A stretch of DNA of 64,000 bases from Ruditapes philippinarum. Taxonomy: Eukaryota. The position numbers were made by a program, and so were the translations under genes. The notes below the pieces were generated by a model, which saw only the letters and a program-made list of their open reading frames with translations, was not told the DNA's origin and made no database searches. The stretch is from positions 1 through 64,000 of the forward strand of contig NW_026862604.1 of assembly GCF_026571515.1 (NCBI RefSeq), given 5' to 3'. The number at the start of each line of letters is the position of its first letter. Position 1 is the stretch's first letter. Shown in pieces: positions 19,779 to 59,483 of the stretch.

Positions 19779-21588
19779 ATGGAGGTCCCTGGAAGAACAC
19801 AAGACAGTCCAACAAAAGATAGTGCAGGGAGGTCTTTGAGTGGAGAAAGAACAATATTTTGTCAACCATGTAGTAGTGACGGCGATACGATAGGTGCCAT
19901 AGGATACTGTCAAAATTGTAATGAGTATCTATGTGCAGTGTGTCTAAAAGTTCATCGCAAGCAAGCCGTGTCAAGAAATCATATTATTCTGGACGGTGAC
20001 AATATGCCTAAAGTTACAATTCCGGCTGTAACCACAAACGCTTGTTCTGATATATGTACCAAACACGTAAATGAAATTGTAAAATATTTCTGCATGTCAC
20101 ATGATGCGGTGGGTTGTGGAGATTGTATGATCATTGATCATAAATCCTGTAAAATTGATCGTATACAAGATATATCTACAGAATATTTCAATGGCACTGA
20201 ACACCAAAATATACTAAAAAAGGTAAAGCAGTTTGTTAAAGATATGGATGAAATAAAAGGGGAGCTACAAGCCAGCGAAGGGAATACGAGACAAGCATAC
20301 ACACAAGCAATTAAAGATGTCAAAGCATTCAAGAAAGAAATCATAGATTATCTTAACAAGGCAGAAAGTGAAATGCTGGAAATGATAAATGAAAGAAAAA
20401 AGAAGAATGAGATGATGATACAGGAACTACAGCAAGCAGAAAGTCGTATTAGAAGAAATATTAAAGAAATACAGACGAAATTACAGCTACAGGTAAACCA
20501 AGCGAATGAGTTGTTTGTTGAAGCAAAACAAGTAAAAGCAAAGCTTATTGATTTTGAAGAGAAAATCTGAATTGTTTTTAAAAAAAGACACCAGCATTGA
20601 TGTATATGAGTTTCAACGTTCCTCCACATGAGCAATTGGCCAAGTCTTGTAGACCACTACGGTGACATAGTTGATCAAACAGAACAAGAAGGTCGAACAC
20701 GTGGTATCAAAATACGATCATCTTGTTTCTAGCAAAGAAATAACAGATCACACTGGTTTAGACAGGAAGAGCATTTCTGAAATGGACTTATTTTGATTGT
20801 GAGATTTAACATTAAACACAAGATGATTCTTCCGATTGCTTTTTGCAAGTTGTGCATTGATTTGCCCAAGTCAGATTATAGTCACAGATAGGAATAATAA
20901 ATGTGTGTTAAACTTAGTTGATGTCAATAACAAACAGTTTCAAAGTACAATCTTAAGTATTGTCCATATGGTCTGTAGCAGTAGTAAATCCCCAATCTGG
21001 TTGCTTGACATTTCATGATAATAGGAAGATACAATTTTTCACCATAACACAGGTTATAAAATCAGTGAAATTGACATGAATCAATGTCCGTACAGGTTGT
21101 AAGAAAATTGCAATCCATGAAGATAAGATTATTGGTATAACCGACACGAGTGTTGAGATTATGAGCATGAGCGGACAACTGATAAAATCTTTATCTCATC
21201 CAAATATGAAATGGTTAATTGATATTGCTGTCATACCAAGCTCACAAATCTTTTATGTCAGTAATCACTTAAGTGTTTTGATGTTTTCAAGTTCGATTTT
21301 GATGGCAATCTGATAGCAACATACAAGGACAAGGATCTGGTAGATGTGAGAGGATTAGAAGTAACAAGAGACGGTACAGTGCTTGCGTGTAACTGGACTG
21401 GAGATGGCAGTATTCATATGATTACTCCTGACTGTAAAAAGATCAAAGAACTCAAGGATAGTAGACATGTAAGATATCCATTGTGTGTTACGTACTGTAA
21501 TAAAACAAATAAACTTTTTGTTGGAAACTATGAGAATAACCTTGACAAGAAGTTCAGAAACGTTTTGAAAGTTTTTCAATTAAGGTAG
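19779..21588 (+). CDS. RING-less TRIM-like protein 1 (B-box1, B-box2, coiled coil, NHL-type propeller); multiple frameshifts after ~20560 (sequencing error or pseudogene)
   Basis: CQPC..YCQNCNEYLCAVCLKVH..H and CTKH..FCMSHDAVGCGDCMIIDH. Colinear with the intact 603-aa paralogue at 57672 through to VLKVFQLR*. Indels are scattered 1-2-bp events. Confidence 0.8.
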
Positions 21589-24869: not shown

Positions 24870-27800
24870 GATCCTGCCGACCCTGAATTCAACGGAAGGT
24901 CACTATACATGCATCCCGACGCCTCCGATGCCGACTCCGGTGACGTAATCCTTACAGACGCCTCAAAATGTAAATGTACCTTATAATTTGTGTGGAACTA
25001 CTTTTCTTCCTAATGATTTGATAAAATATTACTTCTAATAGCGTCTAACATAACCCTAGTGACATAAATGTTATCATGTACCTTATTTTACACAGATTTT
25101 ATATCTTTCCAATAAAATAGATGATAGAACAAAACAATTGCTTCTAATTAAAAAGACAAATCTAACTGATAGCATTTACAATACGTTTCTATTTATATGC
25201 TATGGAACACGTGACACTGTCAGTGTGAGTGACGACGATTTCTATGGCGATCATCAACCAGGCTGCGAAGAGAAACCAGTAGCTGGCGCGATAGGAAGTG
25301 TGATTGGTGGATCAATTTGAGGTATACAATATCAATGTCAAATCCCGAAAATTCTTTATTTCACTGTGAATAAAACAGGCTCATTCAAATTGACCTCGTA
25401 CCATTTGCAATTTTGGCTTCATTTATGTTTCAACTACAAGAATTTAACATAAACAGCACAATGAGCCGGATGCTTACAAATTTTATTTCTAGATTATTTT
25501 AATATATATTTAATACATATTCAAAAGAAGAGAAATTTTGCAACAAAAATTTCAACAAAAAGAATGACGCAAAGTCTACTTTCTTATTTTTTCGCCATCA
25601 TCTTCCGAGAAATCTCGTTTTCTCAGGATTGATTGTTTGTAACAAGACAGAAACAAAGAAAAGGTCAGAGAAACGTGTAACATATTTATTAAAATATAGT
25701 TCATGTGTCTGACTTTTAACATTTTTATATGTGTACATGTAGAAGGATTGGTATATAGTAATTTATTACTTTAATTTTTTTTTTTTGGTTAACCGATAAA
25801 ATAATATACAGCAAAACCTATGAATAAGGCCACCAATAGTGGACACTGAACATAGCCTAAAAAGACATTCAAGTGTTTTGTTTTTTTTGGGACGTTACTC
25901 CGTTCAATTTATGCAATGACGGTTTGTCGAAGATTGATCATTATTCACTGCGTGATCTTTATTTGCAAGTGGTCTTTCACACAGTTTTGACTGTGTACAG
26001 AATATATTATAAATTGTATCCCAATGAAATAGTTTAAATTGTCATGCACTAACTTTTTAAAGATCTTGTAACTAATTTGTTATGGTTTTATAATTATCAT
26101 AAATATGATGCTCAAGTGAAGATTTATAAATATTGTAAGTTCAACAAAATATTTGTAACGATATTACCTAATTAAATTTCATGTAAATAAATTAGTTAAT
26201 TAGAAATCTATTTTCGGTAAAGTTTAAGCCAAATGTTTCAATAACAAATGAATGCATATATTTTAATGATTATTTAAACTGCGAATAAACATTGGCAGTA
26301 CATATTTATAAATATTCTTTGATATTTGGAAATTGTTTTAGAAGAATAATTACATGTATATACATTTATAAAATTTCACTTAACTGTTGTTACATTCTTT
26401 ATTATAATACAGAATCTTTATTGATATAAATCAGCGGTAAAATAACTGAACCGTTTAGGTCAGTACAATGTTAAGACATTACTTTATCATAGTATATTTT
26501 AAAAACAAATTCCACTTCTTGACAAGATAAGACCAACACCGATGTTTTTGTTTACAAAACTGCTGCTATGACACATGTCTTTACCCTCCAGGTATGATTT
26601 ACTAAAATCTAATTTCACAAATCTAGAAATGTCATATGTTGTACACAGCGATTTGATATTAACATCTGTCTTTTTAAGGAACTAGAATATTTCTGCTACA
26701 ACTCTTTTGTTTTCAATTACAGGCGCTGCCAGCTCGATAACATGTAGCCATTCTAGGTCAAGAGAGTTATTTATAGAATCTATAAATTCCAAATGTAAAT
26801 TTTACGCACATACTTGCCCCAGCGGCGACTCGTTTGAAGCAGGGGATTGTCTAGGTTGTCCAGCCGGCGGCTGTCCTGTCATGGGATACGATGCCGACCA
26901 ACAGAGTAGTCTAAGGGGGTCTTTCTATCTCAGCACTTCAGGACAAGCACCGTATTGTGGTAAGACAATCAAAACTAAACAAGCAAAAACAAAACCATTC
27001 GCATTGTTCAAGGTTTATGTCTGTATTATAGTCAAATATCTATAGATATAACATTCAAATAAGTTGCTCAAATACTATTTCCTGCAAGAATCTACATAGT
27101 TACTTTCTATCTTCAAGCGTAAACCGACTGTTTTGGTCAAACTTCTGTAATTAAGATTACTTGAAAACTTAAAAAAACTTTTATTTTTGTTTTATTTCAA
27201 ACAAGCGTATGCATTATGATTATTCTAAAAGTCTACATGTAATTTTTATCTAGAAGAAAATTAATAGGAGAAATAATTGGTAGATTATTTTGATCATGAA
27301 TGTTTTGAATGACTATAGGTCATGAGTATTTTATTGATATCAAGATGGCGGACAGGATGTTTCACACGTATGGAGAGTTTATTATAACTCTGATAGGAAC
27401 TAATGGAAAGTCTGAGCCACTAAAGTTTGAAAGGTAAGTCAAACCTTCTAAAACGTTTTTTAATAGATCTGTATTAAGAGCTTGCATGACATGACAAACT
27501 TACATTATTCTATGTTAAATAAATTTGTTTACTTAAAAATATAGTTGTCTAAATTAAAAGATATAGATGAGCATAAAAAGTGTTGATGGTATTGGTTATT
27601 TTTGCTCCATTAAAGAGTGGTTTAATTTTACTTTGACATAAATATGATTCTGGCAAATATAACACTTTAAAAGGAACAATAAAGTGGTTAATTTCAGCTT
27701 AATGCACACTTTTGACCACGGGAGAGAAGAGAAACACGTCATATCTACCCATACTGATATTGGGACTGTGACGTCAGTACAACTTCAATTTGTCAAATCA

Positions 27801-29091
27801 CGTGATCTTCATGGCCTGCTTGCGGTACCATCTGTCAGAGTACATAGTATAATAGTAGAACCTGCTGAAACTGCTCAGAAGTGAGTAATAATAATCGTAT
27901 TACCTTTTTACCGCTAGAGTATTTCTACAATCATGACAAAACATATACCAGTACAATATTTCTACATGACAAAACATATACCGGTACGGTATTTTTACAA
28001 TGACATTACATGTATGGTATTTCGACAATAATGATACAAACACCGTAACGATACTTACAATAACAATACATATACCGATAACGGGTATTTCTACAATGAC
28101 AATTCACATACTGGTACAGTATTTATACACTTTCAATACATATACCAGTACAGTATTTCTACAATGACAATACATATACCAGTACAGTATTTCTACAATA
28201 ACAATTCATATACCAGTACAATATTTCTACAATGATAATACATATACCCGTACAATATTTCTACAATGACATTTCATATACCAGTACAATATTTCTACAA
28301 TGACAATACATATATCAGTACAATATTTCTACAATGACAATACATATACCCGTACAATATTTCTACAATGACCATACATATACCAGTACAATATTTCTAC
28401 AATGACAATACATATAGCAGTACAATATTTCTACAATGACAATTCATATACCAGTACAATATTTCTACAATGATAATACATATAGCGGTACAGTATTTCA
28501 ACAATGACAATACATATACCAGCACAATATTTTTATAATTGACGATACATTTATCGGAACGGCATTTTTACAATGACAATATATAAAACAGTATGGTGTT
28601 TGCAAAATGACAATATATATACCATTACGGTATTTATACAATGACAATACACATATACATATAACGGTACAATATTTCAACAATGACAAAACATATACAA
28701 GTATGGTGTTTGTATAGTGACAATACACATATACCGGCATATATCTAGAATGGCAATGCATATATGTTATTTCTATGCAATGACAACTAAATGTATAAGT
28801 TACGTTTTTATAATCCTAGTGATAATAAATGTGTATTGTGTTTTAAAATAATATGTCATTATCTTATTTATAAAAATATTTAATATTTTGTGATAGTGCA
28901 CCATGTCCAATATCGAATAAAACAATTTCTGATTACCATTTATTTTATCATCTTTTGACTCTACATATTAAAGTTAAATGCATCGTTAAAAGTAAAAAGA
29001 CACATTTTCTTTCAGAACAACATTCTGTGCTCACGAGCATCGTTTTGTTTCCGGACATGCATCAACTGTGACGTCACACACCGGATGTTAA
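24870..29091 (+). pseudogene. Partial lipase duplicate, copy 2: decayed exon 3 (24870-24969) and exon 4 (~25199-25321); intact exons 5-8 (26723-26959, 27319-27433, 27698-27880, 29016-29091)
   Basis: Starts mid exon 3 (DPADPEFNG..). Exon 4 has lost its AG and the PNG motif and ends in TGA. Exons 5-8 splice in phase: GAASSITCSHSRS..APYC/GHEYFIDIKM..KFE/SLMHTFDH..AQ/KTTFCAHEHRFVSGHASTVTSHTGC*. Exons 1-2 (signal peptide, GHSLG) are missing. Confidence 0.85.
27915..28785. repeat. 34-bp minisatellite in intron 7 of lipase copy 2
   Basis: Tandem caatgacaatacatataccagtacaatatttcta units. Confidence 0.9.
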
Positions 29092-30657: not shown

Positions 30658-31168
30658 TATTAGAATGGTTTATGCCTTAAGTGCCATAAGGTGTTATATA
30701 CGTGCTATTTTTAGGTGTTTAAGTTAAGGGGAGAAAGTTATAGAAACGACAGATATGGTTGACATAATTCTTTAGATCTGAATATTCTTAGAATAAAGAA
30801 TGTTTGAAAATAACATAATAAAGGATAATTATATTTTAAAACAATGAATACTTATATAGCTTATCGAGCTTCTTCCATGAAAGCCTGTATGCGTTAAGTC
30901 AAACATTTCGGACAGTTAAATGAACATTAAACATGTTAAAAGTGTTATGCACCCTTAATAAACAGTTATGACATGTACTATAGATGACAGCGACTTAACT
31001 TTAACGTGTGTCAAAATTATATTAAACCTATTCCCAGTGAACCAGGAAGTGTAAATAAACTTCTTTTCCACGAAGTCACACTGATAAAATATTTGCAGAA
31101 AAAAGAGGTCAATATATCTGTCGTTTGTACATAATATGTCATTTGACTGTGATTTGATACGCAATGTA

Positions 31169-31316
31169 NNNNNNNNNNNNNNNNNNNNNNNNNNNNNNNN
31201 NNNNNNNNNNNNNNNNNNNNNNNNNNNNNNNNNNNNNNNNNNNNNNNNNNNNNNNNNNNNNNNNNNNNNNNNNNNNNNNNNNNNNNNNNNNNNNNNNNNN
31301 NNNNNNNNNNNNNNNN
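31169..31316. other. Assembly gap (N run) covering the expected first-exon donor of TRIM-like gene 2
   Basis: Run of N. Confidence 0.99.
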
Positions 31317-32347
31317 TAAACGATTGATCAGATAAATATTTTAAACACTGTTACAATTGGTCTTTATTATCCATATATGTGGCAAAAGTTATTGTAATAA
31401 CATACTAAATCAGACCTCATACTTTTTGCACGTAACACTCACAGGCGATGGCACACTTGCCGTTGTGTGCCATCGCTTTAATGGTCAAATAATCATAAAA
31501 TAATCTCCATTTGATCACCAGTCTACTATATACATTTTGTACAACATATATACAAAATTTTTTACCGTGTCGGGAAATACCCTATGGACAGTTACATACC
31601 TTGTATATGTTGTTATAAATAGTAAACGAGAACTGGATAGTATTTTTGTCATTGATGATCAAATTATTAAATTACCGGTATTTGATGATAACTTGACCAT
31701 TAGGCATTTAATTAGTATTGGCAAGATAAATGTGCAGAACGCCTTTGGTTAAACTAAAAGTAATATTTAAGCAACTTATTGTGTTGAAACCAAAAGTTTG
31801 ATTATTCAAATAAAATTGATTGCAATATTTTTGGGTCATATAAAGATTTGATTTTTATTACTAGATGTGTAGAAAGTGTACAACAATGGTAAAATTATGA
31901 AATGTAAAATGAAAAGGCAATACATGTACAGGCAACGCGGGCAACTCGTTGTGTAATAACATATATACAATGACGTTTTAAATATTTCTAACAGAAGGTT
32001 TTGTTAAACTGAATTATCAATAATATATAAAAGCAAATAAACCAAAAAAACTTGAATTTTAATAAAAAGACCATAATAGTTCAAATATGCATACATTATT
32101 TTAAAATTCAAAACGTTTCTTGCGAATTTGAAATAAACGATATATAAGTTACTTGTAATTTTAAGATACAAAGAGGTGAATGTCATCTTAGCATACAATT
32201 TCAATGTGACATCATGATTAAGCACTATTGCATTGAGAGAAAAAAATAATTCAAAATTTGAATTCTCTTTCCATTTTCAGAAATAGACAAAGAAACAAAC
32301 AAAGAAGGAAGTAATTCAACTAAATAAAGATCAACATTAGGTAAGAC

Positions 32348-34132
32348 ATGGAGGTCCCAGGTCGAACACAAAACAGTCCACCAAAAGAAAGTGCAGTATT
32401 TTGTCAACCATGTAATAGTGACGGCGAAACGATAGTTGCCATTGGATACTGTCAAAATTGTAACGAGTATTTATGTGCAATATGTCTAAAAGTCCACCGC
32501 AAGCAAGCCGTGTCAAGAAATCATATTATTCTGGTTGGTGACAATATGCCCAAAGTATCACTTCCGGTTGTAACGCCAAACGCATGCTCTGAAATATGTA
32601 CCAAACACGAAAATGAAATAGTTAAATATTTCTGCATGTCACATGATGCCGTGGGTTGTGGAGATTGTATGATCATTGATCATAAATCCTGTAAAGTTGA
32701 TCGTATACAAGATATATCTTTAGAATATTTCAATGGCACTGAACACCAAAATATCCTAAAGAAGGTAGAGCAGTTTGTGAAAGATATCGATGAAATAAAA
32801 TTGGAGCTACAAGCCAGCGAAGGAAATACGAGACAAGCATACACACAAGCAATCAAAGATGTCAAAGCATTCAAGAAAGAAATCATCGATTATCTTAATA
32901 AGGCAGAAAGAGAAATGCTTGAAATGATAAACGAAAGGAAAAAGAAGAATGAGATGCTGATACAGGAACTAAAACAAGCAGAAAGTCATATTGGAAGAAA
33001 TATTAAGGAAATACAGACGAAATTACAGCTACAGGTAAACCAAGCGAATGAGTTGTTTGTTGAAGCAAAACAAGTAAAAGCAAAACTTAACGTTATTGAC
33101 GAAAATCTGAATAGGTTGAAAAAAGACATCAGCATTGATGTATATACATTTCAACATTCTTCTTCCATGGAGCAAATGGTCAAGTCTTGTGTTCCGCTCG
33201 GTGACATAGTTGATGGATCAAAGCAAAAGATCGAACAAAAGGCATCAAAACACGATTGTCTTGTTTCTAGCAAAGAAGTAACAGATCAAACTGGTTTAGA
33301 CAGGAAGAATATTTCTAAAATGGATGCTTATTTTGATTGTGAGATAAACATTAAAACACAAGATGATGCTTCAGATTGCTGTATTAGAAACTGTGCAGTG
33401 ATTTGCCCAAGTCAGATTATAGTCACTGATGCGAATAATAAATGTGTGAAATTAGTTGATGTCAATAACAAAGAAGTTTCAAAGTACAATCTTAAGTATC
33501 GTCCTACTGGTGCAGCAGTAGTAAATCCCAATCTGGTTGCTGTGACATTTCCTGATGATAGGAAGATACAATGTTTGACCATAACAACAGGTAATAAAAT
33601 CATTGAATGCGATATGATCAATGTCCGTAAAGGTTGTCACAAAATTGCAATCCATGAATATAAGATTATTGGTATAACCGACATTAGTGTTGAGATTATG
33701 AGTATGAACGGACAACTGATAAAATCTTTATCTGATCCAAATATGAAAAGGTTAATGGATATTGCTGTCGTACCAAGTTCACAGATGTTTTATGTCAGTA
33801 ATAGTTCATTGGGGTATAAGGCTGTTTTAAAATTCGATTTTGATGGCAATCTGATAGCAACATACCAGGACAAGGATCTGGTAGATGTGAGAGGATTAGA
33901 AGTAACAAAAGACGGTACAGTGCTTGTGTGTAACTGGGCTGGAAATGGCAGTATCCATATGATTACTCCTGACTGTAAAAAGATGAAAGAACTCTTGGAG
34001 AAAAATCAACACATTTATTGTCCATATTGTGTTACTTTCTGTAATGAAACAAATAAACTTTTTGTTGGAAACTATGCTTCAAATATTGACAAACAATTTA
34101 AAAACGTTTTGAAAGTATTTCAATTAAGGTAG
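32348..34132 (+). CDS. RING-less TRIM-like protein 2 (594 aa): B-box1, B-box2, coiled coil, NHL-type beta-propeller
   Basis: Intact single-exon ORF with two B-box Cys/His patterns, a heptad-rich middle and propeller blades (IIVTDANNKCVKLVD, DIAVVP..MFYVS, RGLEVTKDGTVLVCNW..SIHMIT, PYCVTFC..KLFVG). Acceptor at 32280. Confidence 0.92.
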   Translation: MEVPGRTQNSPPKESAVFCQPCNSDGETIVAIGYCQNCNEYLCAICLKVHRKQAVSRNHIILVGDNMPKVSLPVVTPNACSEICTKHENEIVKYFCMSHDAVGCGDCMIIDHKSCKVDRIQDISLEYFNGTEHQNILKKVEQFVKDIDEIKLELQASEGNTRQAYTQAIKDVKAFKKEIIDYLNKAEREMLEMINERKKKNEMLIQELKQAESHIGRNIKEIQTKLQLQVNQANELFVEAKQVKAKLNVIDENLNRLKKDISIDVYTFQHSSSMEQMVKSCVPLGDIVDGSKQKIEQKASKHDCLVSSKEVTDQTGLDRKNISKMDAYFDCEINIKTQDDASDCCIRNCAVICPSQIIVTDANNKCVKLVDVNNKEVSKYNLKYRPTGAAVVNPNLVAVTFPDDRKIQCLTITTGNKIIECDMINVRKGCHKIAIHEYKIIGITDISVEIMSMNGQLIKSLSDPNMKRLMDIAVVPSSQMFYVSNSSLGYKAVLKFDFDGNLIATYQDKDLVDVRGLEVTKDGTVLVCNWAGNGSIHMITPDCKKMKELLEKNQHIYCPYCVTFCNETNKLFVGNYASNIDKQFKNVLKVFQLR

Positions 34133-40791: not shown

Positions 40792-42604
40792 ATGGAGGTC
40801 CCTGGTCGAACACAAGACACCTCACCTGATGATAGGATAGGAATGTCTTTTAGTGGAGACGAAGCGGTATTTTGTCAACCATGTAGTGGTGACGGCGATA
40901 CGATGATTGCCATTGGATACTGTCAAAATTGTAACGAGTGTTTATGTGCAGTTTGTCTAAAAGTCCACCGCAAGCAAGCCGTGTCAAGAAATCATATTAT
41001 TCTGGATGGTGACACTATGCCTAGAGTAACACTTCCGGTTGTAACCCCAAACGCTTGCTCTGAAATATGTACCAAACATGAAAATGAAATAGTTAAATAT
41101 TTCTGCATCTCACATGATGCGGTGGGTTGTGGAGATTGTATGATCATTGACCACAAGTCCTGTAAAGTTGATCGTATACAAGATATATCTACAGAATATT
41201 TAAATGGCACTGAACACCAAAATATCCTAAAGAAGGTAAAGCAGTTGGTAAAAGATACCGATGAAATAAAAAGGAAGCTACAAGCCAGTGAAGAAAACAT
41301 GAGACAAGCCTATACACAAGCAATTAAAGATGTCAAAGCATTCAAGAAAAATCATCGATTATCTTAACAAGGCAGAAAGAGAAATGCTTGAAATGATAAA
41401 CAAAAGGAAAAAGAAGAATGAGACGCTGATACTGGAACTTCAGCAAGCACAAAGTCGAATTGGTAAAAATATTAAAGAAATACAGACGAAATTACAGCTA
41501 CAGGTAAACCAAGCGAATGAGTTGTTTGTTGAGGCAAAACAAGTAAAAACAAAACTTAACGCTATTGATGAAAACCTGAATAGGTTGAATAAAGACATCA
41601 GCATTGATGTATTTGAGTTTCAACATTCTTCCCACATGGAACAAATGGTCAAGTCTTGTGAACCGCTCGGTGACATAGTTGATGGATCAAAGCAAAAGAT
41701 CGAAAACAGGGCATCAAAACACGATTATCTTGTTTGTAGCAAAGACATAACAGATCAAACTGGTTTAGACAGGAAGAGTATTTCTGAAATGGATGCTTAT
41801 TTTGATTGTGAGATTAACATTAAAACACAAGATGATTCTTCATATTGCTCGATTAGAAAATGTGCACTGATTTGCCCAAGTCAGATCATAGTCGCTGATG
41901 GGAAAAATAGATGTGTGAAATTAGTTGATGTCAATAACAAAGAAGTTTCGAAGTACAATCTTCAGTATATTCCCTCTGTTGTAGCAGTAGTAAATCCCAA
42001 TATGGTTGCTGTGACGTTTCCTGATAATAAGAAGATACAATTTTTCACAATAACAGCAGGTAATAAGATCAATGAAAGTCACATAATTAACGTTCATACA
42101 GATTGTAATAAAATTGCAATCCATGAAGATAAGATTATTGGCATAACCAGCACGCCGAGTGTTGAGATTATGAGTATGAGCGGACAACTGATAAAATCTT
42201 TATCTCATCCAAATATGACATGGTTAATGGATATTGCTGTCGTACCAAGTTCACAGATGTTTTATGTCAGTAATAATTCATTCGGGTATAAGGGTGTTTT
42301 AAAATATGATTTTAATGGCAATCTGATAGCAACATACGAGGACAATGATCTGGTAGATGTGAGAGGATTAGAAATAACAAGAGACGGTACAGTGCTTGTG
42401 TGTAATTGGGCTAGAGATGGCAGTATACATATGATAACACCTGACTGTAAAAAGATAAAAGAACTCTTGAAAGATGATGGACATGTTAGAAGTCCCTGGT
42501 GTGTTACGTTCTGTAATGACACAAATAAACTATTTGTTGGAAACTTTGCGTCAAATATTGATAAAAAGTTTAAAAACGCTTTGAAAGTATTTCAATTAAG
42601 GTAG
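40792..42604 (+). pseudogene. RING-less TRIM-like gene 3, split by a single 2-bp deletion at ~41347-41351 (ORFs 40792-41367 and 41330-42604)
   Basis: ttcaagaaaaatc here versus ttcaagaaagaaatc in the other four copies; otherwise colinear and free of stops. Confidence 0.8.
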
Positions 42605-45684: not shown

Positions 45685-47331
45685 ATGTGCTTTTTCTTTG
45701 GTCTTTATGTGGCATTTTTCCCAGAAACTAGTAAAATTACAACATTAAGCAGTCGGTTTATGAGATTTCCTTCTTTCTTAATTAAGATTATGGACGGAAT
45801 GCAGCTTATAGACCATTGGATGTTTGTGCCCGAACTGTCGCACGGAGGTACCTACACCGACATGTACGTCAAAATTGACGACTTAGTCGAGCACACCGCA
45901 AGCAGGCTCGACAGAAACGTATATAACACTTTATCTTGTCATTACATTGATATCCTAAGGAAGGTAGTGCAGTATGTTAAAGATATGGATGAAATAAAAA
46001 GCGAGCTACAAGCCAGCGAAGGAAACATGAGAAAAGCCCATTCACAAGCAATTAAAGATGTCAAAGCATTCAAGAAAGAAATCATTGATTATCTTAACAA
46101 GACAGAAAGTGAAATGCTTGAATTGATAAACGAAAGAAAAAAGAAGAATGAAGTTCTGATACAGGAACTACAGCAAGCAGAAAGTCATACTGGTAGAAAA
46201 ATTAGAGAAATGCAGACGAAATTACATCTTCAGGTAAACCAAGCGAATGACTTGTTTGTTGAGGCAAAACAAGTAAAAGCACAACTGAACGCTATTGATG
46301 AAAATCTAAATAAATTAAATAAAGACATTAGCATTGATGTATTTGAGTTTCAACGTTCTTCCCACATGGAGCAAATGGTCAAGTCCTGTGTACCGCTCGG
46401 TGACATAGTTGATCAAACAGAACAAAAGGTCGAACAGGGGGTATCCAAACATGATTGTCAAATTTCTAGTAAAGAAGTAACAGATAACACTGGTTTAGAC
46501 AGGAAAAGAATTTTTGAAATGGATGCTTATTTTGATTGCGATATTAATATTAAAACACAAGATGATTTTTACGACTGCTTTGTTCAAAATTGTGCATTAA
46601 TTTGCCCAAGTCAGATTATAATCATTGATGAGAAAAATAAATGTTTAAAATTAGTTGATGTCAGTAACAAAGACGTTTCAAAGCACACTCTTAAGTATTG
46701 TCCCACTGGTGTAGCAGTAGTAAATCCCAATCTGGTTGCTGTGACATTTCCTGATGATAGGAAGATACAATTGTTTACAATAACAACAGGTAATAAAATC
46801 ATTGAAAGCGACATGCTCAGTGTCCATACAGGTTGTAAGAAAATTGTAATTCATGAAGATAAGATTATTGGTATAACCAATACGAGTGTTGAGATTATGA
46901 GCATTAGCGGACAACTGATAAAATCTTTATCTCACACAAAAAAGGATCGGTTAATGGATATAGCTGTCGTACCAAATTCACAGATGTTTTATGTCAGTAA
47001 TGTTTCATCTGGGTATCGTGGTGTTTTCAAATTCGATTTTGATGGCAATCTGATAGCAACATACCAGGACAAGGATCTGGTATATCCGAGAGGAGTAGAA
47101 GTAACACGAGACGGTACAGTGCTAGTGTGTAACTGGGCTGGCGATGGTAGTATCCATATGATTACTCCAGACTGTAAAAAGATCAAAGAACTCTTGAAAG
47201 AAAATCAACACGTATATTCTCCATATTGTGTTACTTTCTGTAATGAAACAATTCAACTTTTTGTTGGTAACTTTGCTTCAAATATTGACAAAAAGTTCAA
47301 GAACACCCTGAAAGTATTTCAATTATGGTAG
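45685..47331 (+). CDS. 5'-truncated TRIM-like gene 4: coiled coil and propeller (homology from 45950), B-boxes deleted, in frame with repeat-derived upstream codons; may be a pseudogene
   Basis: Open frame 45676-47331. From ILRKVVQYVKDMDEIK onward it is colinear with the paralogues; upstream DNA matches the 36660-36907 intergenic repeat. Confidence 0.65.
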   Translation: MCFFFGLYVAFFPETSKITTLSSRFMRFPSFLIKIMDGMQLIDHWMFVPELSHGGTYTDMYVKIDDLVEHTASRLDRNVYNTLSCHYIDILRKVVQYVKDMDEIKSELQASEGNMRKAHSQAIKDVKAFKKEIIDYLNKTESEMLELINERKKKNEVLIQELQQAESHTGRKIREMQTKLHLQVNQANDLFVEAKQVKAQLNAIDENLNKLNKDISIDVFEFQRSSHMEQMVKSCVPLGDIVDQTEQKVEQGVSKHDCQISSKEVTDNTGLDRKRIFEMDAYFDCDINIKTQDDFYDCFVQNCALICPSQIIIIDEKNKCLKLVDVSNKDVSKHTLKYCPTGVAVVNPNLVAVTFPDDRKIQLFTITTGNKIIESDMLSVHTGCKKIVIHEDKIIGITNTSVEIMSISGQLIKSLSHTKKDRLMDIAVVPNSQMFYVSNVSSGYRGVFKFDFDGNLIATYQDKDLVYPRGVEVTRDGTVLVCNWAGDGSIHMITPDCKKIKELLKENQHVYSPYCVTFCNETIQLFVGNFASNIDKKFKNTLKVFQLW

Positions 47332-52770: not shown

Positions 52771-53204
52771 AAGAGCTTGCATGACATGACAAACTTACAT
52801 TATTCTATGTTAAATAAATGTGTTTATTTAAAAATATAGTTGTCTAAATTAAAAGATATAGATGATCATAAAAAGAGTTGTTGGTATTGGTTATTTTGCT
52901 CCATTAAAGAGTGGTTTAATTTTACTTTGACATAAATATGATTCTGGCAAATATAACACTTTAAAAGGAACAATAAAGTGGTTAATTTCAGCTTAATGCA
53001 CACTTTTGACCACGGGAGAGAAGAGAAACACGTCATATCTACCCATACTGATATTGGGACTGTGACGTCAGTACAACTTCAATTTGTCAAATCACGTGAT
53101 CTTCATGGCCTGCTTGCGGTACCATCTGTCAGAGTACATAGTATAATAGTAGAACCTGCTGAAACTGCTCAGAAGTGAGTAATGATAATTTCATTACTTT
53201 TTTA

Positions 53205-54050
53205 CCAGTAGAGTATTTCTACAATGACAAAACATAAACCGGTACGGTATTTTTACAATGACATAACATGTATGGTATTTCGACAATAATGATACAAACA
53301 CCGGTATGATATTACCAATACATATTCTGATAACGGGTATTTCTACAATGACAATACATATACCGGTACGGTATTTCTACAATGACAATACATATACCGG
53401 TACGGTATTTCTACCATGGCAATACATATTCTGATAACGGTATTTCTACGATGACAATACATATACCAGTACAGTATTTCTATATTGACATATACCAGTG
53501 CGTTATTCTACAATAACATATATACATACACCGGTACAGTATTTCAACAATGACAATATATATACCATTACGATATTTAAACAACTGACGATACATTTAT
53601 CAGAAGGGTACTTATACAATGACAATATATAAAACAGTATGGTGTTTGTAAAATGGCAATACATGTACCATTACGATATTTATACAATTGACGATACATT
53701 TATCCAAAGGGCATTTTTACAACGACATTATATAAAACAGAATGGTGTTTGTAAAATGACCATACATGTACCATTACGATATTTATACAATTGACGATAC
53801 ATTTATCGGAAGGGCATTTTTACAATGACAATATATAAAACAGTATGGTGTTTGTAAAATGACAATATATATACCATTACGGTATTTATACAATGACAAT
53901 ACACATATACATATATAACGGTACAATATTTCAACAATGACGAAACATATACCAGTATGGTGTTTGTATATTGACAATACACATATTCATATACCGGTAT
54001 ATGATTTCTAGAATGGCAATACATATATTGTATTTCTATGCAATGACAAC
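53205..54050. repeat. 34-bp minisatellite with a ~116-bp higher-order triplication, intron 7 of lipase copy 3
   Basis: Basic units, then three copies of tgacgatacatttatc..aggg..atggtgtttgtaaaatg..accattacg. Confidence 0.8.
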
Positions 54051-54636: not shown

Positions 54637-55205
54637 AGCAGGTTAAGGCAACTTCCTTCTTCAATCAGTGGAAACATATTTTCTCCTCTGGGCCTACTGA
54701 TCTTGGTTCTACTGACTTGGTCGAACATGAAATCAATCTGTCTGATCCCACACCACCTTTTAAAGACCCTTATCGCCGAATACCACCAGGGATGTTTGAG
54801 GAGGTACGTGAGCATTTACGAGACATGATTTCGGCAGGAGCGATCCGTGAGTCCAAGAGTCCTTTTTCTTCTAATGTTGTGCTAGTAAGAAAGAAGGACG
54901 GGTCTTTGCGTTTTTGTATCGATTACCGGAAACTGAACAACCGTACAATCAAGGATGCTTATGCCCTTCCTCGCATCGACGAAACTATAGATTCTCTCAT
55001 AGGTTCCACTATTTTCTCTAAACTCGACCTACGCTCAGGTTACTGGCAGGTCCCAGTCAAAGAATCTGATGAGCAAAAGACTGCCTTTAATGTTGGGCCT
55101 CTCGGATTCTATGAGTGCAACAGAATGGCTTTTGGTCTTACCAATGCCCCTGCAACGTTTCAGCGTCTGATGGAGCGTTGTATGGGCGAACTTCACCTTC
55201 GTGAC
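54637..55205 (+). mobile_element. Ty3/Gypsy pol fragment (RT N-terminal half, 569 bp), no LTR and no TSD
   Basis: PYRRIPP..SPFSSNVVLVRKKDGSLRFCIDYRKLN..LPRIDE..FSKLDLRSGYWQV..KTAF..RMAFGLTNAPATFQRLM; stops just before YxDD. Empty sites at ~15520 and ~29375. Confidence 0.93.
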
Positions 55206-57671
55206 ACAAGCTTATACAAATAAATGTTCAAGGTCGTGATCTCAAACATTGCTATATTGTAAATAAATCCTATGAGGCATAAAAGTAAGACCTATCATTT
55301 AGGTAGCAATGAAATCAATTAAGGTAAACGTTTTTTTTATAATAACACATGGTCGCTGACTTCTGAACCTCTTGACCCTCACCTCTGTGGTTTCGAATCT
55401 CGTCAGGTTATTCGAATTAAAAAAAAAAAATCTGAATATTGTTCTGCTTAGGATCCCGTTCGTGCATGAATTGATGCAGGAGGGGCACCTAAGGTCTTCC
55501 TCTGCTAGTTTTGGAAAGTCGCCTTATATGTAGATAATATTGTAAATATGTAAAATGAATATATCTATATTCTCATTCTGTTATTGAAATTTAAAATAAT
55601 TTCAAAGTGATCTTCTAAATAAAATACCAAGTTTGCTTTTAAGCAGCTAAAAGAGGTATTTTAATGTCGTCATTTAAAGCAATCTTACACAAATTTTGAC
55701 ACCTATTTAAAAGTGTAATTATCGTATTTCATGTCATGCATGATTTATATTTTGGAAACCAGAATGAAAATGGTACTCTGTTTCACAAATGTTTTGGTTA
55801 CAAATCTTGCAATTCTTTTAAAATCTAGTATATTATTATAAACCTTTACCCCATAGATGACAGCGACTTGATTTTAACGAGTCAAAATTATATTAAACCT
55901 ACTCCCAGTGAACCAGGAAGTGTTTGATAAAAGAGAGGTCAATATATCTGTCGCTTGTACATAATATTTCATTTGCCTTGATTTTATAGGCAATAAAACT
56001 GCAGGTAAGATTTTATACTGAAATGAATTCATATATCACTAGTCTTTCACGTTTTCTGTAAATCAATATGTAATAGTTATAGTACATGAAACGAGACAGT
56101 TACGAGGATATAACACTAGCTGGGGCCACAGACACTTGGAGTATGGACCCCGCCCTTCACTGCCCCTGAATAATAAAAACTAAAAGGATTGTTTATTACA
56201 AGAATTAGTTTTAAATTTTTGCTTATATTAGTATGAGACGGTTAAGTGTCTAAAAATTGAACAACTTTGAATAGAATTTCATAACGTTTTAAAAAAGTCA
56301 ATTTTTACCAACGCTTCAATTTCCTGAAGATACCAAGCTTCGAAATGTAAACACAACTGACCTACATATATATTTCAAGTATTTATGTTATCGCATGCCA
56401 TTTATTTCTGGTGTAAAGCAGTCGATATAAATATTCTTTTAATAAATAAATGCATGTTATTATCCGATCGTACCTTTTTTCCAAACTTTGCATATCTAAT
56501 TACATTTTCCTAACCGCGTCACATGCTTCTTTACGAATTCATGATGCTGATTCAAGATTAAATGGCTTTTTTTTCAGTGGAAATAATTCATTCAGCAGAT
56601 GTACCTTTTGATTAAATGAGAGTAAATTTCATTTCATAAATTATCTTTGTTTATATTTTTCATTGTATTTATTTATTTATTTATTTTATTTTATTAATTC
56701 CTTTTTATTTGCTTCTAGAAATTTTCGTTACCACTGCCCCATTGGAGCCTCTATGAAAAAAAACATTGATATACAAGGTGCTATTTAGCAGTCGTTTTTT
56801 TTCCTATGTGAATCAATAAAAAACCTGTACTGCTATATATCAATACAGTTTTCAAATGCTCATTGAAGTGTACCGAGTATAATGGTTTAGTAAGAACAAA
56901 GGCAAATTTCCAAACCATGCGATAATAGTAAATATCAGATAAAATCGTACTTTATTGTCCATGTATATGTTGCCTTTATCTTTATACGCAAGTTATTGAT
57001 ATAACATACTAAATCATACCTCTTACTTTTTGCACGTTAAACTCAAATTAGTATAAAATAATCTCCCATTGATCATCAAGATAAGCACCTGTTGACTATA
57101 TTTAGCATAATGACCGTGTCGGGAAATCTCTACGGCGAATTATAACCTTGTGTATGTTACACATAGTAAACCGGTACTGGATTATATTTTTGATGTTGAT
57201 GATCAAGGGGAGGTTACCGGTTTTTGATGATAACTTGACCATTATTGGCAAGATAAATGTGCTGAACGCCTGTGGTTCAACTAAAAGTAATATAAAGCAA
57301 CAAACTGTGTTCAAACTCAAAGTGTGATTATTCAAATATAAAATTAATTACAAACAAACAAACACAAACTTGAATTTCAATAAAAAGACCATAATTATGG
57401 TTCAATTATTCATAAATTATCTAAAATTTAAAGCATATATTGCTATAATGAAATGAATGAAATGAGTTTCTTGGAATATTAGTGATCCAGTCACGAAAAG
57501 AGGTGATTGTCATATAAACATGACTTCATGATTTAGCACGATAGCATTGAAAAAATTCAAACATTGTAATTCTCTTTCCATTTTTCAGAAATAGATAAAG
57601 AAACAGACACAGAAGAAAGTGCGTCATGAAAAAAGTAATTTGACTAAATAAAGGTCAACATAATGTAAGAC

Positions 57672-59483
57672 ATGGAGGTCCCTGGAAGAACACAAGACAG
57701 TCCTCCAAAAGATAGTGCAGGGAGGTCTTTGAGTGGAGAAAGAACAATATTTTGTCAACCATGTAGTAGTGACGGCGATACGATAGGTGCCATAGGATAC
57801 TGTCAAAATTGTAATGAGTATCTATGTGCAGTGTGTCTAAAAGTTCATCGCAAGCAAGCCGTGTCAAGAAATCATATTATTCTGGACGGTGACAATATGC
57901 CTAAAGTTACAATTCCGGCTGTAACCCCAAACGCTTGTTCTGATATATGTACCAAACACGTAAATGAAATTGTAAAATATTTCTGCATGTCACATGATGC
58001 GGTGGGTTGTGGAGATTGTATGATCATTGATCATAAATCCTGTAAAATTGATCGTATACAAGATATATCTACAGAATATTTCAATGGCACTGAACACCAA
58101 AATATACTAAAAAAGGTAAAGCAGTTTGTTAAAGATATGGATGAAATAAAAGGGGAGCTACAAGCCAGCGAAGGGAATACGAGACAAGCATACACACAAG
58201 CAATTAAAGATGTCAAAGCATTCAAGAAAGAAATCATCGATTATCTTAACAAGGCAGAAAGTGAAATGCTGGAAATGATAAATGAAAGAAAAAAGAAGAA
58301 TGAGATGATGATACAGGAACTACAGCAAGCAGAAAGTCGTATTAGAAGAAATATTAAAGAAATACAGACGAAATTACAGCTACAGGTAAACCAAGCGAAT
58401 GAGTTGTTTGTTGAGGCAAAACAAGTAAAAGCAAAACTTAATGATTTTGAAGAAAATCTGAATAGTTTAAAAAAAGACACCAGCATTGATGTATATGAGT
58501 TTCAACGTTCCTCCCACATGGAGCAAATGGTCAAGTCTTGTAGACCACTCGGTGACATAGTTGATCAAACAGAACAAGAGGTCGAACACGTGGTATCAAA
58601 ATACGATCATCTTGTTTCTAGCAAAGAAGTAACAGATCACACTGGTTTAGACAGGAAGAGCATTTCTGAAATGGATGCTTATTTTGATTGTGAGATTAAC
58701 ATTAAAACACAAGATGATTCTTCAGATTGCTTTATTGCAAGCTGTGCATTGATTTGCCCAAGTCAAATTATAATCATTGATGAAAACAATAAATGTTTAA
58801 AATTAGTCGAGGTCAATATCAAAAAAGTTTCAAAGTACAAAGTTAAGAATATTCCCACTGGAGTTGCAGTAGTAAATCCCAATCTAGTTTCTGTGACATT
58901 TCCTGGTGAAAGGAAGATACAATTTTTCACAATAACAACAAGTAATAAGATCATTGAAAGCGATATGATCATTGTCAGTACAGGTTGTAAGAAAATTGCA
59001 ATCTATGAAGATAAGATTATTGGTATAACCAGCACGAGTGTTGAGATAATGAGCATGAGCGGTCAACTAATAAAATCTATATCTAACCCAAATATGGTAT
59101 GGTTAATGGATATTGCTGTCGTACCAAGTTCACAAATGTTTTATGTCAGTAATGGTTCATTGGGGTATAAGGCTGTTTTCAAGTTCGATTTTGATGGCAA
59201 TTTGATAGCAACATACCAGGACAAGGATCTGGTAGATGTGAGAGGATTAGAAGTAACAAGAGACGGTATTGTGCTTGTGTGTAATTGGGCCAGTTCTGGC
59301 AGTATTCGTATGATAACTCCTGACTGTAAAATGATCAAAGAACTCTTGAAGGGTGATAGACATGTTAGTTATCCATATTGTGTTACCTTCTGTAATGAAA
59401 CAAATAAACTTTTTGTTGTTAACAGTCACTATAACCTTGACAAGAAGTTTAGAAACGTGCTGAAAGTCTTTCAATTAAAGTAG
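57672..59483 (+). CDS. RING-less TRIM-like protein 5 (603 aa): B-box1, B-box2, coiled coil, NHL-type beta-propeller
   Basis: Intact single-exon ORF with the same architecture as gene 2; upstream non-coding exon donor at 56004/56005 and acceptor at 57588. Confidence 0.92.
   Translation: MEVPGRTQDSPPKDSAGRSLSGERTIFCQPCSSDGDTIGAIGYCQNCNEYLCAVCLKVHRKQAVSRNHIILDGDNMPKVTIPAVTPNACSDICTKHVNEIVKYFCMSHDAVGCGDCMIIDHKSCKIDRIQDISTEYFNGTEHQNILKKVKQFVKDMDEIKGELQASEGNTRQAYTQAIKDVKAFKKEIIDYLNKAESEMLEMINERKKKNEMMIQELQQAESRIRRNIKEIQTKLQLQVNQANELFVEAKQVKAKLNDFEENLNSLKKDTSIDVYEFQRSSHMEQMVKSCRPLGDIVDQTEQEVEHVVSKYDHLVSSKEVTDHTGLDRKSISEMDAYFDCEINIKTQDDSSDCFIASCALICPSQIIIIDENNKCLKLVEVNIKKVSKYKVKNIPTGVAVVNPNLVSVTFPGERKIQFFTITTSNKIIESDMIIVSTGCKKIAIYEDKIIGITSTSVEIMSMSGQLIKSISNPNMVWLMDIAVVPSSQMFYVSNGSLGYKAVFKFDFDGNLIATYQDKDLVDVRGLEVTRDGIVLVCNWASSGSIRMITPDCKMIKELLKGDRHVSYPYCVTFCNETNKLFVVNSHYNLDKKFRNVLKVFQLK

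What the first reader, a model, noticed from the sequence alone, without database searches (positions are those of the whole stretch)
19779..59483. Array of RING-less B-box/NHL genes with hypervariable propeller loops: candidate diversifying recognition system
Seen: the B-boxes and strand cores are highly similar among the five paralogues, while non-conservative changes recur at equivalent short segments about once or twice per blade. For genes 2/3/4/5: ASDCCIRNC/SSYCSIRKC/FYDCFVQNC/SSDCFIASC; YRPTG/YIPSV/YCPTG/NIPTG; RKGCHK/HTDCNK/HTGCKK/STGCKK; MKRL/MTWL/KDRL/MVWL; NSSLG/NNSFG/NVSSG/NGSLG; WAGNG/WARDG/WAGDG/WASSG; IYCPY/VRSPW/VYSPY/VSYPY; NYASN/NFASN/NFASN/NSHYN. Known: NHL propellers (Brat, LIN-41/TRIM71) bind ligands on the top face built from such loops, and TRIM C-terminal domains can be under pathogen-driven selection (e.g. 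TRIM5 B30.2). Inference: these are intracellular sensors with a constant oligomerising scaffold and a variable binding face. Lacking a RING, they would need a partner E3 or act without ubiquitin-ligase activity.
Basis: partly seen in the sequence, partly recalled or inferred. Interest (0 to 1): 0.8.

Follow-up and report, generated by a model that had tools for sequence, protein, structure and literature searches.

The report
Clam B-box/NHL genes with hypervariable face
A Manila clam locus holds tandem copies of a Brat-like gene (two zinc B-boxes, a coiled coil, an NHL propeller, no RING) whose scaffold is conserved while the ligand-binding face of the propeller evolves under positive selection, as expected of a recognition repertoire whose targets are still unknown.

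Summary
The core observation holds, but not for five good genes. Two copies are intact (g2, g5). g3 has a 2-nt deletion, g4 has no B-boxes, and g1 is a broken mosaic that may be an assembly artefact.

The C-terminal domain is a six-bladed NHL propeller (AF2 pLDDT 93.5; best PDB folds TRIM2 and Brat). With seven further copies from the same genome (ten analysed; g1 left out), dN/dS is 0.24-0.25 in the B-boxes and coiled coil and 0.60 in the propeller.

My own codon site models find about 5-7% of codons at omega 3.5-5. M1a/M2a gives 2dlnL 61-86, against at most 6.1 in 12 mosaic null simulations. All 18 selected propeller sites lie in or next to the d-a and b-c loops, the top face that binds RNA in Brat. 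None lies in a bottom loop. A second subfamily (33% identical) shows the same pattern.

The N gap sits in g2's 5'UTR intron, not in coding sequence. A transcriptome-sized run has contigs confined to the mRNA, one of them apparently spliced across the gap.

RING-less is confirmed. An immune or sensor role is untested.

The scan found the same kind of array on other DNA of this genome (s1-803846, s1-810581).

The parts
19779..21585 (+). g1: broken mosaic copy. B-boxes and coiled coil read open to 20570; the linker and propeller part has many frameshifts.
   Evidence: tblastn pieces lie in three frames, with 14 stops inside. Nearest-neighbour scan and block alignment: 100% identical to g5, then a zone rich in small indels, then 99-100% identical to h1 (C9730) and h2 (C12673).
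31135..31165 (+). 3' end of the g2 5'UTR exon (its start is not defined). GT follows at 31166-31167.
   Evidence: The 29-nt loose end of an X1 contig, lying before 32279, equals window 31135-31163. A 19-nt part of it matches once, with 0 matches in 100 shuffles. Sequence read.
31166..32280 (+). g2 5'UTR intron, containing the assembly gap 31169-31316. Polypyrimidine tract and CAG acceptor at 32278-32280.
   Evidence: The acceptor context is conserved in g1, g2, g5 and g7; h1 has CTG at that position. The exact junction is ambiguous by 1-2 nt, and one letter differs between the contig and the window.
32348..34132 (+). g2 CDS, intact, 594 aa, single exon.
   Evidence: ORF. TAA at 32342-32344 is in frame just upstream of the ATG. 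X1 contigs cover 32279-34246 only.
32402..32524 (+). g2 B-box 1 (residues 19-59; C19 C22 C35 C38 C43 C46 H50 H59).
   Evidence: Pfam ANCHR-like_BBOX/zf-B_box, weak hits. Ligands conserved in at least 90% of 29 relatives. Profile hit to the TIF1-beta RBCC, E 8e-16.
32585..32692 (+). g2 B-box 2 (residues 80-115; C80 C84 H87 C96 C104 C107 C115 invariant; H99, D100 and H112 nearly invariant).
   Evidence: Pfam zf-B_box stretch 83-113. Invariant columns.
32738..33124 (+). g2 coiled coil: long helix 131-228 and return helix 233-259.
   Evidence: AF2 full-length model. Pfam TRIM_CC weak, E 0.016. Profile hits to the TRIM25 and TRIM3 coiled coils.
33125..33325 (+). g2 linker (residues 260-326), low confidence or disordered. 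It holds 5 of the 23 selected sites.
   Evidence: pLDDT below 50 for residues 290-319. Linker omega 0.71. Selected alignment columns 275, 281, 306, 310, 316.
33326..34126 (+). g2 six-bladed NHL propeller (residues 327-593). The hypervariable top-face loops are the d-a and b-c loops.
   Evidence: AF2 pLDDT 93.5, 24 strands. Foldseek TRIM2/Brat/Mei-P26/TRIM3 NHL, TM 0.76-0.78. Profile E 1e-12 to 4e-10 to Thin, Brat, TRIM2, TRIM71 and TRIM3 NHL. Selected sites.
40792..42604 (+). g3: full-length copy with one 2-nt deletion near 41345, otherwise open.
   Evidence: Two overlapping ORFs. Deletion seen in the alignment.
45883..47331 (+). g4: 5'-truncated copy with coiled coil, linker and propeller but no B-boxes. 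Repeat-like DNA lies upstream.
   Evidence: tblastn from query residue ~109-118. blastn homology from 45950; 45504-45951 resembles repeats at 35973-36907.
55853..55994 (+). g5: homologue of the g2 5'UTR-exon region (by similarity only).
   Evidence: blastn 30980-31165 to 55853-55994, 70% identity.
57672..59483 (+). g5 CDS, intact, 603 aa.
   Evidence: ORF. Pfam zf-B_box 32.5 bits, above the cutoff.

Best explanation
The window carries part of a tandem array of Ruditapes philippinarum genes. The array has at least 8 copies on this contig, with related copies on two other contigs. The genes encode cytosolic, RING-less, Brat-like proteins: B-box1, B-box2, a long coiled coil, a disordered linker and a six-bladed NHL propeller.

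Shown here: the zinc-finger and coiled-coil scaffold is under purifying selection. About 5-7% of codons are under positive, diversifying selection. Within the propeller, every one of those codons lies on the top face (d-a and b-c loops). Copies also exchange segments by gene conversion or unequal crossing-over. At least g2, or copies at least 95% alike, appears to be transcribed from a spliced 5'UTR exon.

Inferred: the coiled coil dimerises the protein as in TRIMs, and each paralogue presents a differently shaped top face. The family would then be a germline repertoire of intracellular binding specificities, most likely shaped by an arms race with pathogens or genomic parasites. The ligand class (protein or RNA) is unknown. 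Output would be without intrinsic E3 activity, by sequestration, Brat-like repression, or pairing with a RING-bearing relative.
For: Organism and family: best named hits are R. philippinarum, with 48% identity to Mercenaria proteins. There are 2502 first-look candidates in the genome. Mollusc B-box+NHL clusters appear in the Atlas.

Fold.

Selection: NG86 omega on the six intact copies is 0.24 (B-box), 0.25 (coiled coil), 0.71 (linker) and 0.60 (propeller), with dS about equal across domains at 0.16-0.23. Site models on the six intact copies give M1a/M2a 2dlnL 61.1, M7/M8 73.6 and M8a/M8 59.1. On ten copies they give 86.2 and 123.4; the N-terminal half alone gives 8.8 and the C-terminal half 68.1.

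Null control: simulations under M1a with six mosaic segments gave a maximum LRT of 6.06 in 12 replicates.

Placement: 18 of 18 selected propeller sites are in odd loops (14) or two residues from one (4), and none is in an even loop. The tree-free omega is 0.92 for odd loops, 0.40 for strands and 0.37 for even loops.

Top-face definition and register: PMC4015489 Fig. [quoted passage not shown]

Replication: a second subfamily of 9 intact genes gives 2dlnL 113 and 134, with 9 selected sites in odd loops, 0 in even loops and 4 in strands. Model positions 28, 48, 71 and 172 are shared with the first subfamily.

Composition: selected sites are enriched in W (13x), R (5.6x) and Y (3.2x).

Recombination: PHI test, 0 of 1000 permutations reach the observed value.

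Expression: X1 contigs are confined to 32279-34246 and one carries a spliced loose end. Fourteen transcriptome-sized runs from 8 studies hold 0.39-0.57 of g2's sampled words.
Against: As a whole class the top-face loops do not exceed neutrality: omega 0.92 with bootstrap CI 0.56-1.45 on the six intact copies, and 0.72 on all ten.

The site models are my own implementation. Branch lengths were fixed to M0 times one scale factor, and posteriors are naive empirical Bayes. PAML and HyPhy were not available.

Recombination is real and can inflate such tests. It was controlled only by one simulated null and by splitting the alignment into halves.

Selected columns 495, 497 and 500 adjoin an alignment gap.

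Three of the five window copies are broken or doubtful.

The RNA evidence is indirect. X1 is only guessed to be RNA. The one clean raw RNA run gave 8 reads, all 95-99% alike. X22's reads break at GATC, as a Hi-C library's would.

No coordinates of the AF2 model were available, so 'face' rests on loop parity and register, not on measured geometry.

Nothing here bears on immunity, ligand or induction.

The net charge of the top loops is -2 to +5, so the face is not clearly electropositive like Brat's.
Confidence: 0.6

Rival explanations
1. The proteins form a diversified RNA-binding repertoire. As in Brat and LIN-41, the NHL top face binds RNA. Under this reading the paralogues are RING-less post-transcriptional repressors whose RNA specificity diversifies against viral or transposon RNAs, or among endogenous mRNAs. 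This is a special case of the recognition reading, with the ligand class fixed as RNA.
For: The architecture is identical to Brat's, which lacks a RING and binds RNA on the top surface (PMC4015489). The best fold and profile hits are RNA-binding NHLs: Brat, TRIM71, Mei-P26. Arginine and aromatic residues are enriched at selected sites.
Against: The top-loop net charge is only -2 to +5 and varies in sign among copies. PMC4015489 describes an electropositive top surface for RNA-binding TRIM-NHLs. W, Y, S and R enrichment fits protein-binding hot spots equally well. No electrostatic surface could be computed because no coordinates were available.
Confidence: 0.2
2. This is non-immune functional divergence. 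Duplicates specialise on different endogenous partners (for example as substrate adaptors that pair with RING-bearing TRIM relatives), with bursts of adaptive change after each duplication rather than a continuing arms race.
For: Paralogue comparisons cannot separate post-duplication specialisation from continuing diversifying selection. Related mollusc clusters with RING+B-box+NHL exist and could be partners (rank 27). Human TRIM-NHL top openings also differ strongly between paralogues (PMC9634614).
Against: The same top-face positions are hit in two subfamilies. The family is very large, with tandem arrays, frequent pseudogenes and ongoing conversion, which is the usual birth-and-death picture of arms-race families. 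Oyster TRIM-like transcripts cluster in infection-related modules (PMC9892467, passages read), though those are not these genes.
Confidence: 0.13
3. There is no adaptive signal. The array is decaying, and relaxed constraint, gene conversion, alignment error and long-read or polishing artefacts together mimic hypervariable loops.
For: Three of five window copies are broken. g1 looks like a chimera with homopolymer-type indels. Recombination is significant. Pooled top-loop omega is about 1.
Against: M2a and M8 beat nulls that already allow omega=1 by 2dlnL 59-134. The mosaic null reaches at most 6.1. The same sequences give only 8.8 in the N-terminal half. dS is even across domains. Random errors would not avoid all 42 bottom-loop residues. 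The six intact copies alone give the same result.
Confidence: 0.07

Closest known systems
Drosophila Brat / C. elegans NCL-1 type 'incomplete TRIM-NHL' (B-box1, B-box2, coiled coil, NHL, no RING)
   Same: Same domain order and same absence of a RING. Six-bladed NHL with the N-terminal strand closing blade 6. Brat NHL is among the best fold hits (1q7f TM 0.76) and profile hits (E 3e-12). Brat's functional surface is the top face (PMC4015489).
   Different: Brat is a conserved, single-copy developmental repressor with an electropositive RNA-binding top face. The clam genes are a fast-evolving tandem multigene family, about 15% identical to Brat in the NHL. Their top loops are near neutral in charge and positively selected. 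The NCL-1 architecture is recalled, not checked here.
Teleost finTRIM / btr / hltr and primate TRIM5alpha (TRIM multigene families with a positively selected C-terminal domain)
   Same: Tandem or multigene TRIM-type families with a conserved B-box/coiled-coil scaffold. Positive selection (M1a/M2a, M7/M8) is concentrated in the loops that form the ligand-binding surface of the C-terminal domain. Recombination among copies occurs (PMC3137616, passages read).
   Different: In those families the variable domain is B30.2 (PRY/SPRY) and a RING is present. Here the variable domain is an NHL propeller and there is no RING. Antiviral function is documented for TRIM5alpha but is untested here.
Human TRIM2 / TRIM3 / TRIM71 NHL domains
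   Same: Best structural matches (7b2r E 1e-12, TM 0.77-0.78). Sequence diversity among these paralogues is concentrated at the top opening and the blade-connecting loops (PMC9634614).
   Different: They carry a RING (and a filamin domain, by recall). They are ancient single-copy orthologues, not lineage-specific arrays. No positive selection is reported in the passages I read.

Membership tests
TRIM/RBCC proteins (complete tripartite motif) | N-terminal RING finger | tested here: not met
   The ORFs begin 18-27 residues before B-box 1. In-frame stops lie 2-9 codons upstream of the ATG; in g2 the TAA lies downstream of the splice acceptor. There is no RING hit in Pfam.
TRIM/RBCC proteins (complete tripartite motif) | One or two B-box zinc fingers | tested here: met
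   Pfam zf-B_box scores 32.5-35.2 bits in g5 and g1, above the 24.1 cutoff, and 22.6 in g2, below it. Two full sets of Cys/His ligands are invariant or at least 90% conserved in 29 relatives. Profile hits to TIF1-beta and MID1 B-boxes.
TRIM/RBCC proteins (complete tripartite motif) | Coiled coil following the B-boxes | tested here: met
   AF2 helix 131-228 plus return helix 233-259. Profile hits to TIF1-beta RBCC (E 8e-16), TRIM25 (6e-8) and TRIM3 coiled coil (2e-7). Pfam TRIM_CC is only weak at E 0.003-0.016. Dimerisation itself was not tested.
NHL-repeat six-bladed propeller (Pfam PF01436 clan) | Six four-stranded blades with NHL repeat signature | tested here: met
   24 strands, pLDDT 93.5. 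Top Foldseek hits are TRIM2, Brat, Mei-P26 and TRIM3 NHL at TM 0.76-0.78; seven-bladed G-beta scores TM 0.64-0.69. Family profile against PDB: Thin, Brat, TRIM2, TRIM71, TRIM3 and PknD NHL at E 1e-12 to 9e-8. Single sequences fail Pfam NHL (best E 0.058).
Brat-like RNA-binding TRIM-NHL | Electropositive RNA-binding top surface | tested here: inconclusive
   Only loop charge counts were possible: net -2 to +5 among ten copies. No coordinates and no electrostatics.
Brat-like RNA-binding TRIM-NHL | RING-less B-box1/B-box2/coiled-coil/NHL order | tested here: met
   Brat's lack of a RING is stated in PMC4015489.
Diversifying immune TRIM multigene families (TRIM5 / finTRIM type) | Tandem multigene family with positive selection on the ligand-binding loops of the C-terminal domain | tested here: met
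   Array of at least 8 copies on the contig. Site models and loop mapping.
Diversifying immune TRIM multigene families (TRIM5 / finTRIM type) | B30.2/SPRY C-terminal domain | tested here: not met
   The C-terminal domain is an NHL propeller.
Diversifying immune TRIM multigene families (TRIM5 / finTRIM type) | Antiviral or immune function, induction by infection | not testable with these tools
   No challenge experiment was accessible.

The most novel reading that the evidence does not exclude
Bivalves may keep a very large germline repertoire of RING-less B-box/NHL proteins (hundreds or more per genome). In it the NHL top face would play the part that B30.2 loops play in vertebrate TRIMs or LRRs play in plant NLRs. 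The repertoire would be a cytosolic recognition library, diversified by positive selection at about 20 fixed top-face positions and reshuffled among tandem copies by gene conversion. It might be aimed at viral or transposon RNA, since the homologous face of Brat and LIN-41 reads RNA.
Probability: 0.25. Interest if true: 0.85.

Novelty: new variant of a known kind. Interest (0 to 1): 0.62.

Why it matters
TRIM-type families with a positively selected recognition domain are known for B30.2 (TRIM5alpha, fish finTRIM/btr). NHL propellers are known as conserved RNA- or protein-binding modules.

An NHL propeller serving as the hypervariable module of a RING-less multigene family would add a new scaffold to the short list of animal germline recognition repertoires. 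It would also give bivalve immunology a concrete, testable family. Bivalves lack adaptive immunity and suffer herpesvirus, Perkinsus and transmissible-cancer epidemics.

The roughly 20 selected positions on a confidently modelled fold tell an experimenter exactly which residues to swap between paralogues.

I found no paper describing this in nine full-text searches. Subscription journals and supplementary files were not searchable. Oyster papers do list many 'TRIM-like' transcripts (PMC9892467).

Tried and rejected
Pfam on single sequences did not call NHL (best E 0.058). NCBIfam gave only noise. I therefore relied on the fold and on a family profile.

The plain gene-wide or domain-wide dN/dS>1 criterion is not met in 45 of 45 pairs for the whole gene and for the propeller. 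The signal appears only at site level.

X22, labelled RNA-seq, was rejected as RNA evidence. Of its 214 laid reads, 196 fit only partly, and the loose ends start at GATC.

Variants seen in the runs (16 nonsynonymous and 7 synonymous of the 23 listed; 68 more were not shown) were not used. Alleles and paralogues at least 95% alike cannot be told apart.

The AF2 coordinates are not exposed, so no surface distances or electrostatics could be computed.

The literature hits PMC4759782 and PMC8905726 matched 'TRIM' only through 'trimmed/Trimmomatic' or not at all. PMC9334734 and PMC8195603 give context only.

Fourteen null simulations were planned and 12 finished within the time limit.

The CDS is one exon and was searched as such.
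Full report
WHAT IS THERE

The window is G000:C11091:1-64000 of a 1.41-Gb genome. The best named protein matches are from Ruditapes philippinarum (Manila clam). The nearest other species is Mercenaria mercenaria at 48% identity.

Six-frame ORFs and tblastn show five + strand copies of one gene:
- g1, 19779-21585
- g2, 32348-34132 (594 aa, intact)
- g3, 40792-42604
- g4, about 45883-47331
- g5, 57672-59483 (603 aa, intact)

The array continues beyond the window at C11091:66378, 78526 and 98358. Close relatives at 81-86% identity lie on C9730 and C12673. After these there is a jump to many relatives at about 30-35% identity. The first look found 2502 candidates, of which 74 were scored.

THE GAP

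The N run 31169-31316 is the only one in the window. It lies about 1 kb upstream of the g2 ATG and in no copy's coding sequence.

A contig of run X1 starts on the window at 32279 and carries 29 loose letters upstream. A 19-letter part of that loose end matches the window once, at 31145-31163, with 0 matches in 100 shuffles. The full 29 letters equal 31135-31163. GT follows at 31166-31167, and a polypyrimidine tract with CAG ends at 32280.

So g2 has a 5'UTR exon, and the gap sits inside the 5'UTR intron, a few bases after the donor. One letter at the junction differs between the contig and the window, so the exact junction is uncertain by 1-2 nt.

Both sides of the gap are collinear with the g1 and g5 units. 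In g5 the matching blocks lie about 1.05 kb apart, against 320 nt in g2, so the gap may hide several hundred bases. I did not fill it.

STATE OF THE COPIES

g3 has a 2-nt deletion in AAGAAAGAAA and is otherwise open. This could be a recent null allele or a sequencing error.

g4 begins to resemble the others only from about codon 109-135. Upstream of that lies repeat-like DNA, so g4 has no B-boxes.

g1 is odd. Its first ~770 nt are 100% identical to g5, although its upstream flank is not. Alignment columns ~770-1340 carry 17 of the gene's 18 small indels, many at homopolymers. Columns 1340-1600 are 100% identical to the C9730 copy apart from a single-base gap, and the last ~225 nt are about 99-100% identical to the C12673 and C9730 copies. 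That indel-to-substitution ratio, next to perfect tracts, suggests a chimeric or poorly polished consensus at least as much as a real pseudogene.

Mosaicism among copies is general. Nearest neighbours change along the gene. My PHI test is significant, with 0 of 1000 permutations reaching the observed value, both for the six intact copies and for nine copies.

THE PROTEIN

Pfam finds B-boxes. The score passes the cutoff in g1 and g5 and falls just below it in g2. Pfam gives a weak TRIM coiled coil and essentially no NHL hit.

Two complete sets of zinc ligands are invariant or at least 90% conserved across 29 relatives.

AF2 of g2 residues 315-594, with a 31-row alignment, gives pLDDT 93.5 and pTM 0.91, with 24 strands forming six blades. 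The best PDB folds are the NHL domains of TRIM2, Brat, Mei-P26 and TRIM3 (TM 0.76-0.78, E about 1e-12). Seven-bladed G-beta chains have similar E-values but lower TM, 0.64-0.69.

A family profile hits Thin, Brat, TRIM2, TRIM71, TRIM3 and PknD NHL at E 1e-12 to 9e-8. Its N-terminal part hits the TIF1-beta RBCC at 8e-16.

The full-length model (pLDDT 78.6) shows two small zinc modules, a 98-residue helix with a return helix, a disordered linker (residues 290-319, pLDDT below 50) and the propeller.

There is no RING. In-frame stops lie 2-9 codons before the ATG, and in g2 the stop lies after the splice acceptor. This is the architecture of Brat, which "lacks the RING domain" (PMC4015489, passage read).

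SELECTION

I built a 604-codon alignment of ten copies. Six are intact (g2, g5, two further copies on the contig, and one each on C9730 and C12673). Four are broken; their frame pieces were placed with gaps at the breaks. g1 was left out.

NG86 on the six intact copies gives omega 0.44 overall. By region it is 0.24 (B-boxes), 0.25 (coiled coil), 0.71 (linker) and 0.60 (propeller). dS is similar across regions at 0.16-0.23. No pair has omega above 1 for the whole gene or for the propeller.

The trees are star-like with low support.

My own codon-model code uses F3x4 frequencies, with branch lengths from M0 times one scale factor. On the six intact copies it gives M1a/M2a 2dlnL 61.1, M7/M8 73.6 and M8a/M8 59.1, with 5-6.5% of sites at omega 4.7-5.2. 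On ten copies it gives 86.2 and 123.4, with 4.7-6.9% of sites at omega 3.5-4.4.

Analysed separately with their own trees, the N-terminal half gives 8.8 (one site) and the C-terminal half 68.1. The N-terminal half serves as an internal control.

As a null control I simulated under M1a with six segments of permuted tip labels, which mimics conversion. The maximum LRT was 6.06 in 12 replicates.

WHERE THE SITES ARE

With M8 posterior above 0.9 on ten copies, 23 sites are selected: 5 in the end of the coiled coil and the linker, and 18 in the propeller. Of the 18, 14 lie in odd-numbered loops, 4 lie in strands two residues from an odd loop, and 0 lie in the 42 even-loop residues. Fisher's test of odd against even loops gives p=0.0013, and the odd zone against the rest gives p=3.7e-4. 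The six intact copies give 9, 2 and 0.

In an antiparallel propeller, consecutive loops alternate between the two faces. All these sites therefore lie on one face, whatever the blade register.

The register comes from alignment to TRIM2 and to NHL repeats. It makes the odd loops the d-a and b-c loops. These loops "by definition" form the top surface, the RNA-binding face of Brat (PMC4015489, Fig. 5 legend). This agrees with the TRIM2 C-terminus lying on the bottom surface (PMC9634614).

A tree-free NG86 by structural class gives omega 0.92 for odd loops (CI 0.56-1.45), 0.40 for strands and 0.37 for even loops. As a class, then, the face is near neutral, and only a subset of its positions exceeds 1.

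Selected sites are enriched in W, R, Y and S. Columns 495, 497 and 500 adjoin an indel and are less secure.

REPLICATION

Nine intact genes of another subfamily (contigs C4347, C9942, C13550) are 75-87% identical to each other and about 33% identical to g2. They give 2dlnL 113.1 (M1a/M2a) and 134.0 (M7/M8), with about 3.5% of sites at omega about 6. There are 15 selected sites: 2 in the N-terminal half, 9 in odd loops, 0 in even loops and 4 in strands. Model positions 28, 48, 71 and 172 are shared with the first subfamily.

Two earlier notes of this scan on other pieces of the same genome reached similar readings.

EXPRESSION

Fourteen runs with transcriptome-sized contig sets (83-176 million letters, 8 studies) hold 0.39-0.57 of g2's sampled words. 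Their kind is only guessed to be RNA.

In X1, contigs cover 32279-34246 and nothing in the flanks apart from a repeat. One contig carries the spliced loose end described above. The DNA-sized run X16 covers all 30 bins, with CDS depth about ten times the flank depth, as expected of a roughly ten-copy family.

The raw RNA run X24 gave only 8 reads, about 6% of the run having been read. X22's reads break at GATC and are not usable as RNA evidence.

So transcription of g2, or of copies at least 95% alike, is likely but not proven. Nothing is known of tissue or induction.

COMPARISON AND VERDICT

In architecture these are Brat-like incomplete TRIM-NHL proteins. In evolutionary behaviour they resemble fish finTRIM/btr/hltr and TRIM5alpha, where positive selection falls on the variable loops of B30.2 (PMC3137616, passages read). 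Here the module is an NHL top face and there is no RING.

Oyster studies list many TRIM-like transcripts in infection-related modules (PMC9892467, passages read). In nine full-text searches I found no description of a hypervariable NHL face in molluscs. Supplements and subscription journals were out of reach.

I rate this a new variant of a known kind. The immune-sensor function remains an inference.

Noticed in passing
window 19779-21585: g1 is a patchwork. It is 100% identical to g5 for the first ~770 nt. A zone follows with 17 of its 18 small indels, many at homopolymers. After that it is 99-100% identical to copies on contigs C9730 and C12673. It is either a very recent multi-donor conversion product or an assembly/polishing chimera.
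   Followed up: partly
window 14393-14821, 27933-28731, 53203-53907: Arrays of a 34-nt satellite (12-23 copies) sit at the same place upstream in the ~12.5-kb duplication units of g1, g2 and g5.
   Followed up: no
window 48821-49748 and 62159-62543: Tandem arrays with a 26/52/78-nt period (CTTACACTAAACTCTCC... units). The first coincides with the strong GC skew of -0.377 seen.
   Followed up: no
window 54637-55205 (ORF 54717-55223): A reverse-transcriptase fragment (Pfam RVT_1, E 3e-20) lies exactly where the g5 unit has ~570 nt more than the g2 unit (g2 29377/29383 correspond to 54636/55206).
   Followed up: partly
window 26707-27045: An ORF of 112 aa matches the C-terminal end of Pfam Lipase (E 1.6e-18). 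It is probably an exon or relic of a lipase gene between g1 and g2.
   Followed up: no
window 34573-34906 (inverted partial copy 30544-30656): A high-copy repeat just downstream of g2. Its depth in the DNA-sized run X16 is 11,000-16,000, against about 115-125 in single-copy flanks.
   Followed up: no
run X22 laid on window 31400-36400: This run is recorded as paired RNA-seq, but its reads behave like a proximity-ligation (Hi-C-type) library. Of 214 laid reads, 196 fit only partly, and the loose ends begin with GATC at several places.
   Followed up: no
window 32993: One contig of the DNA-sized run X16 (depth 117) reads T for G here, which would turn g2 codon 216 into a stop. It may be a null allele or a paralogue at least 95% alike.
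   Followed up: no
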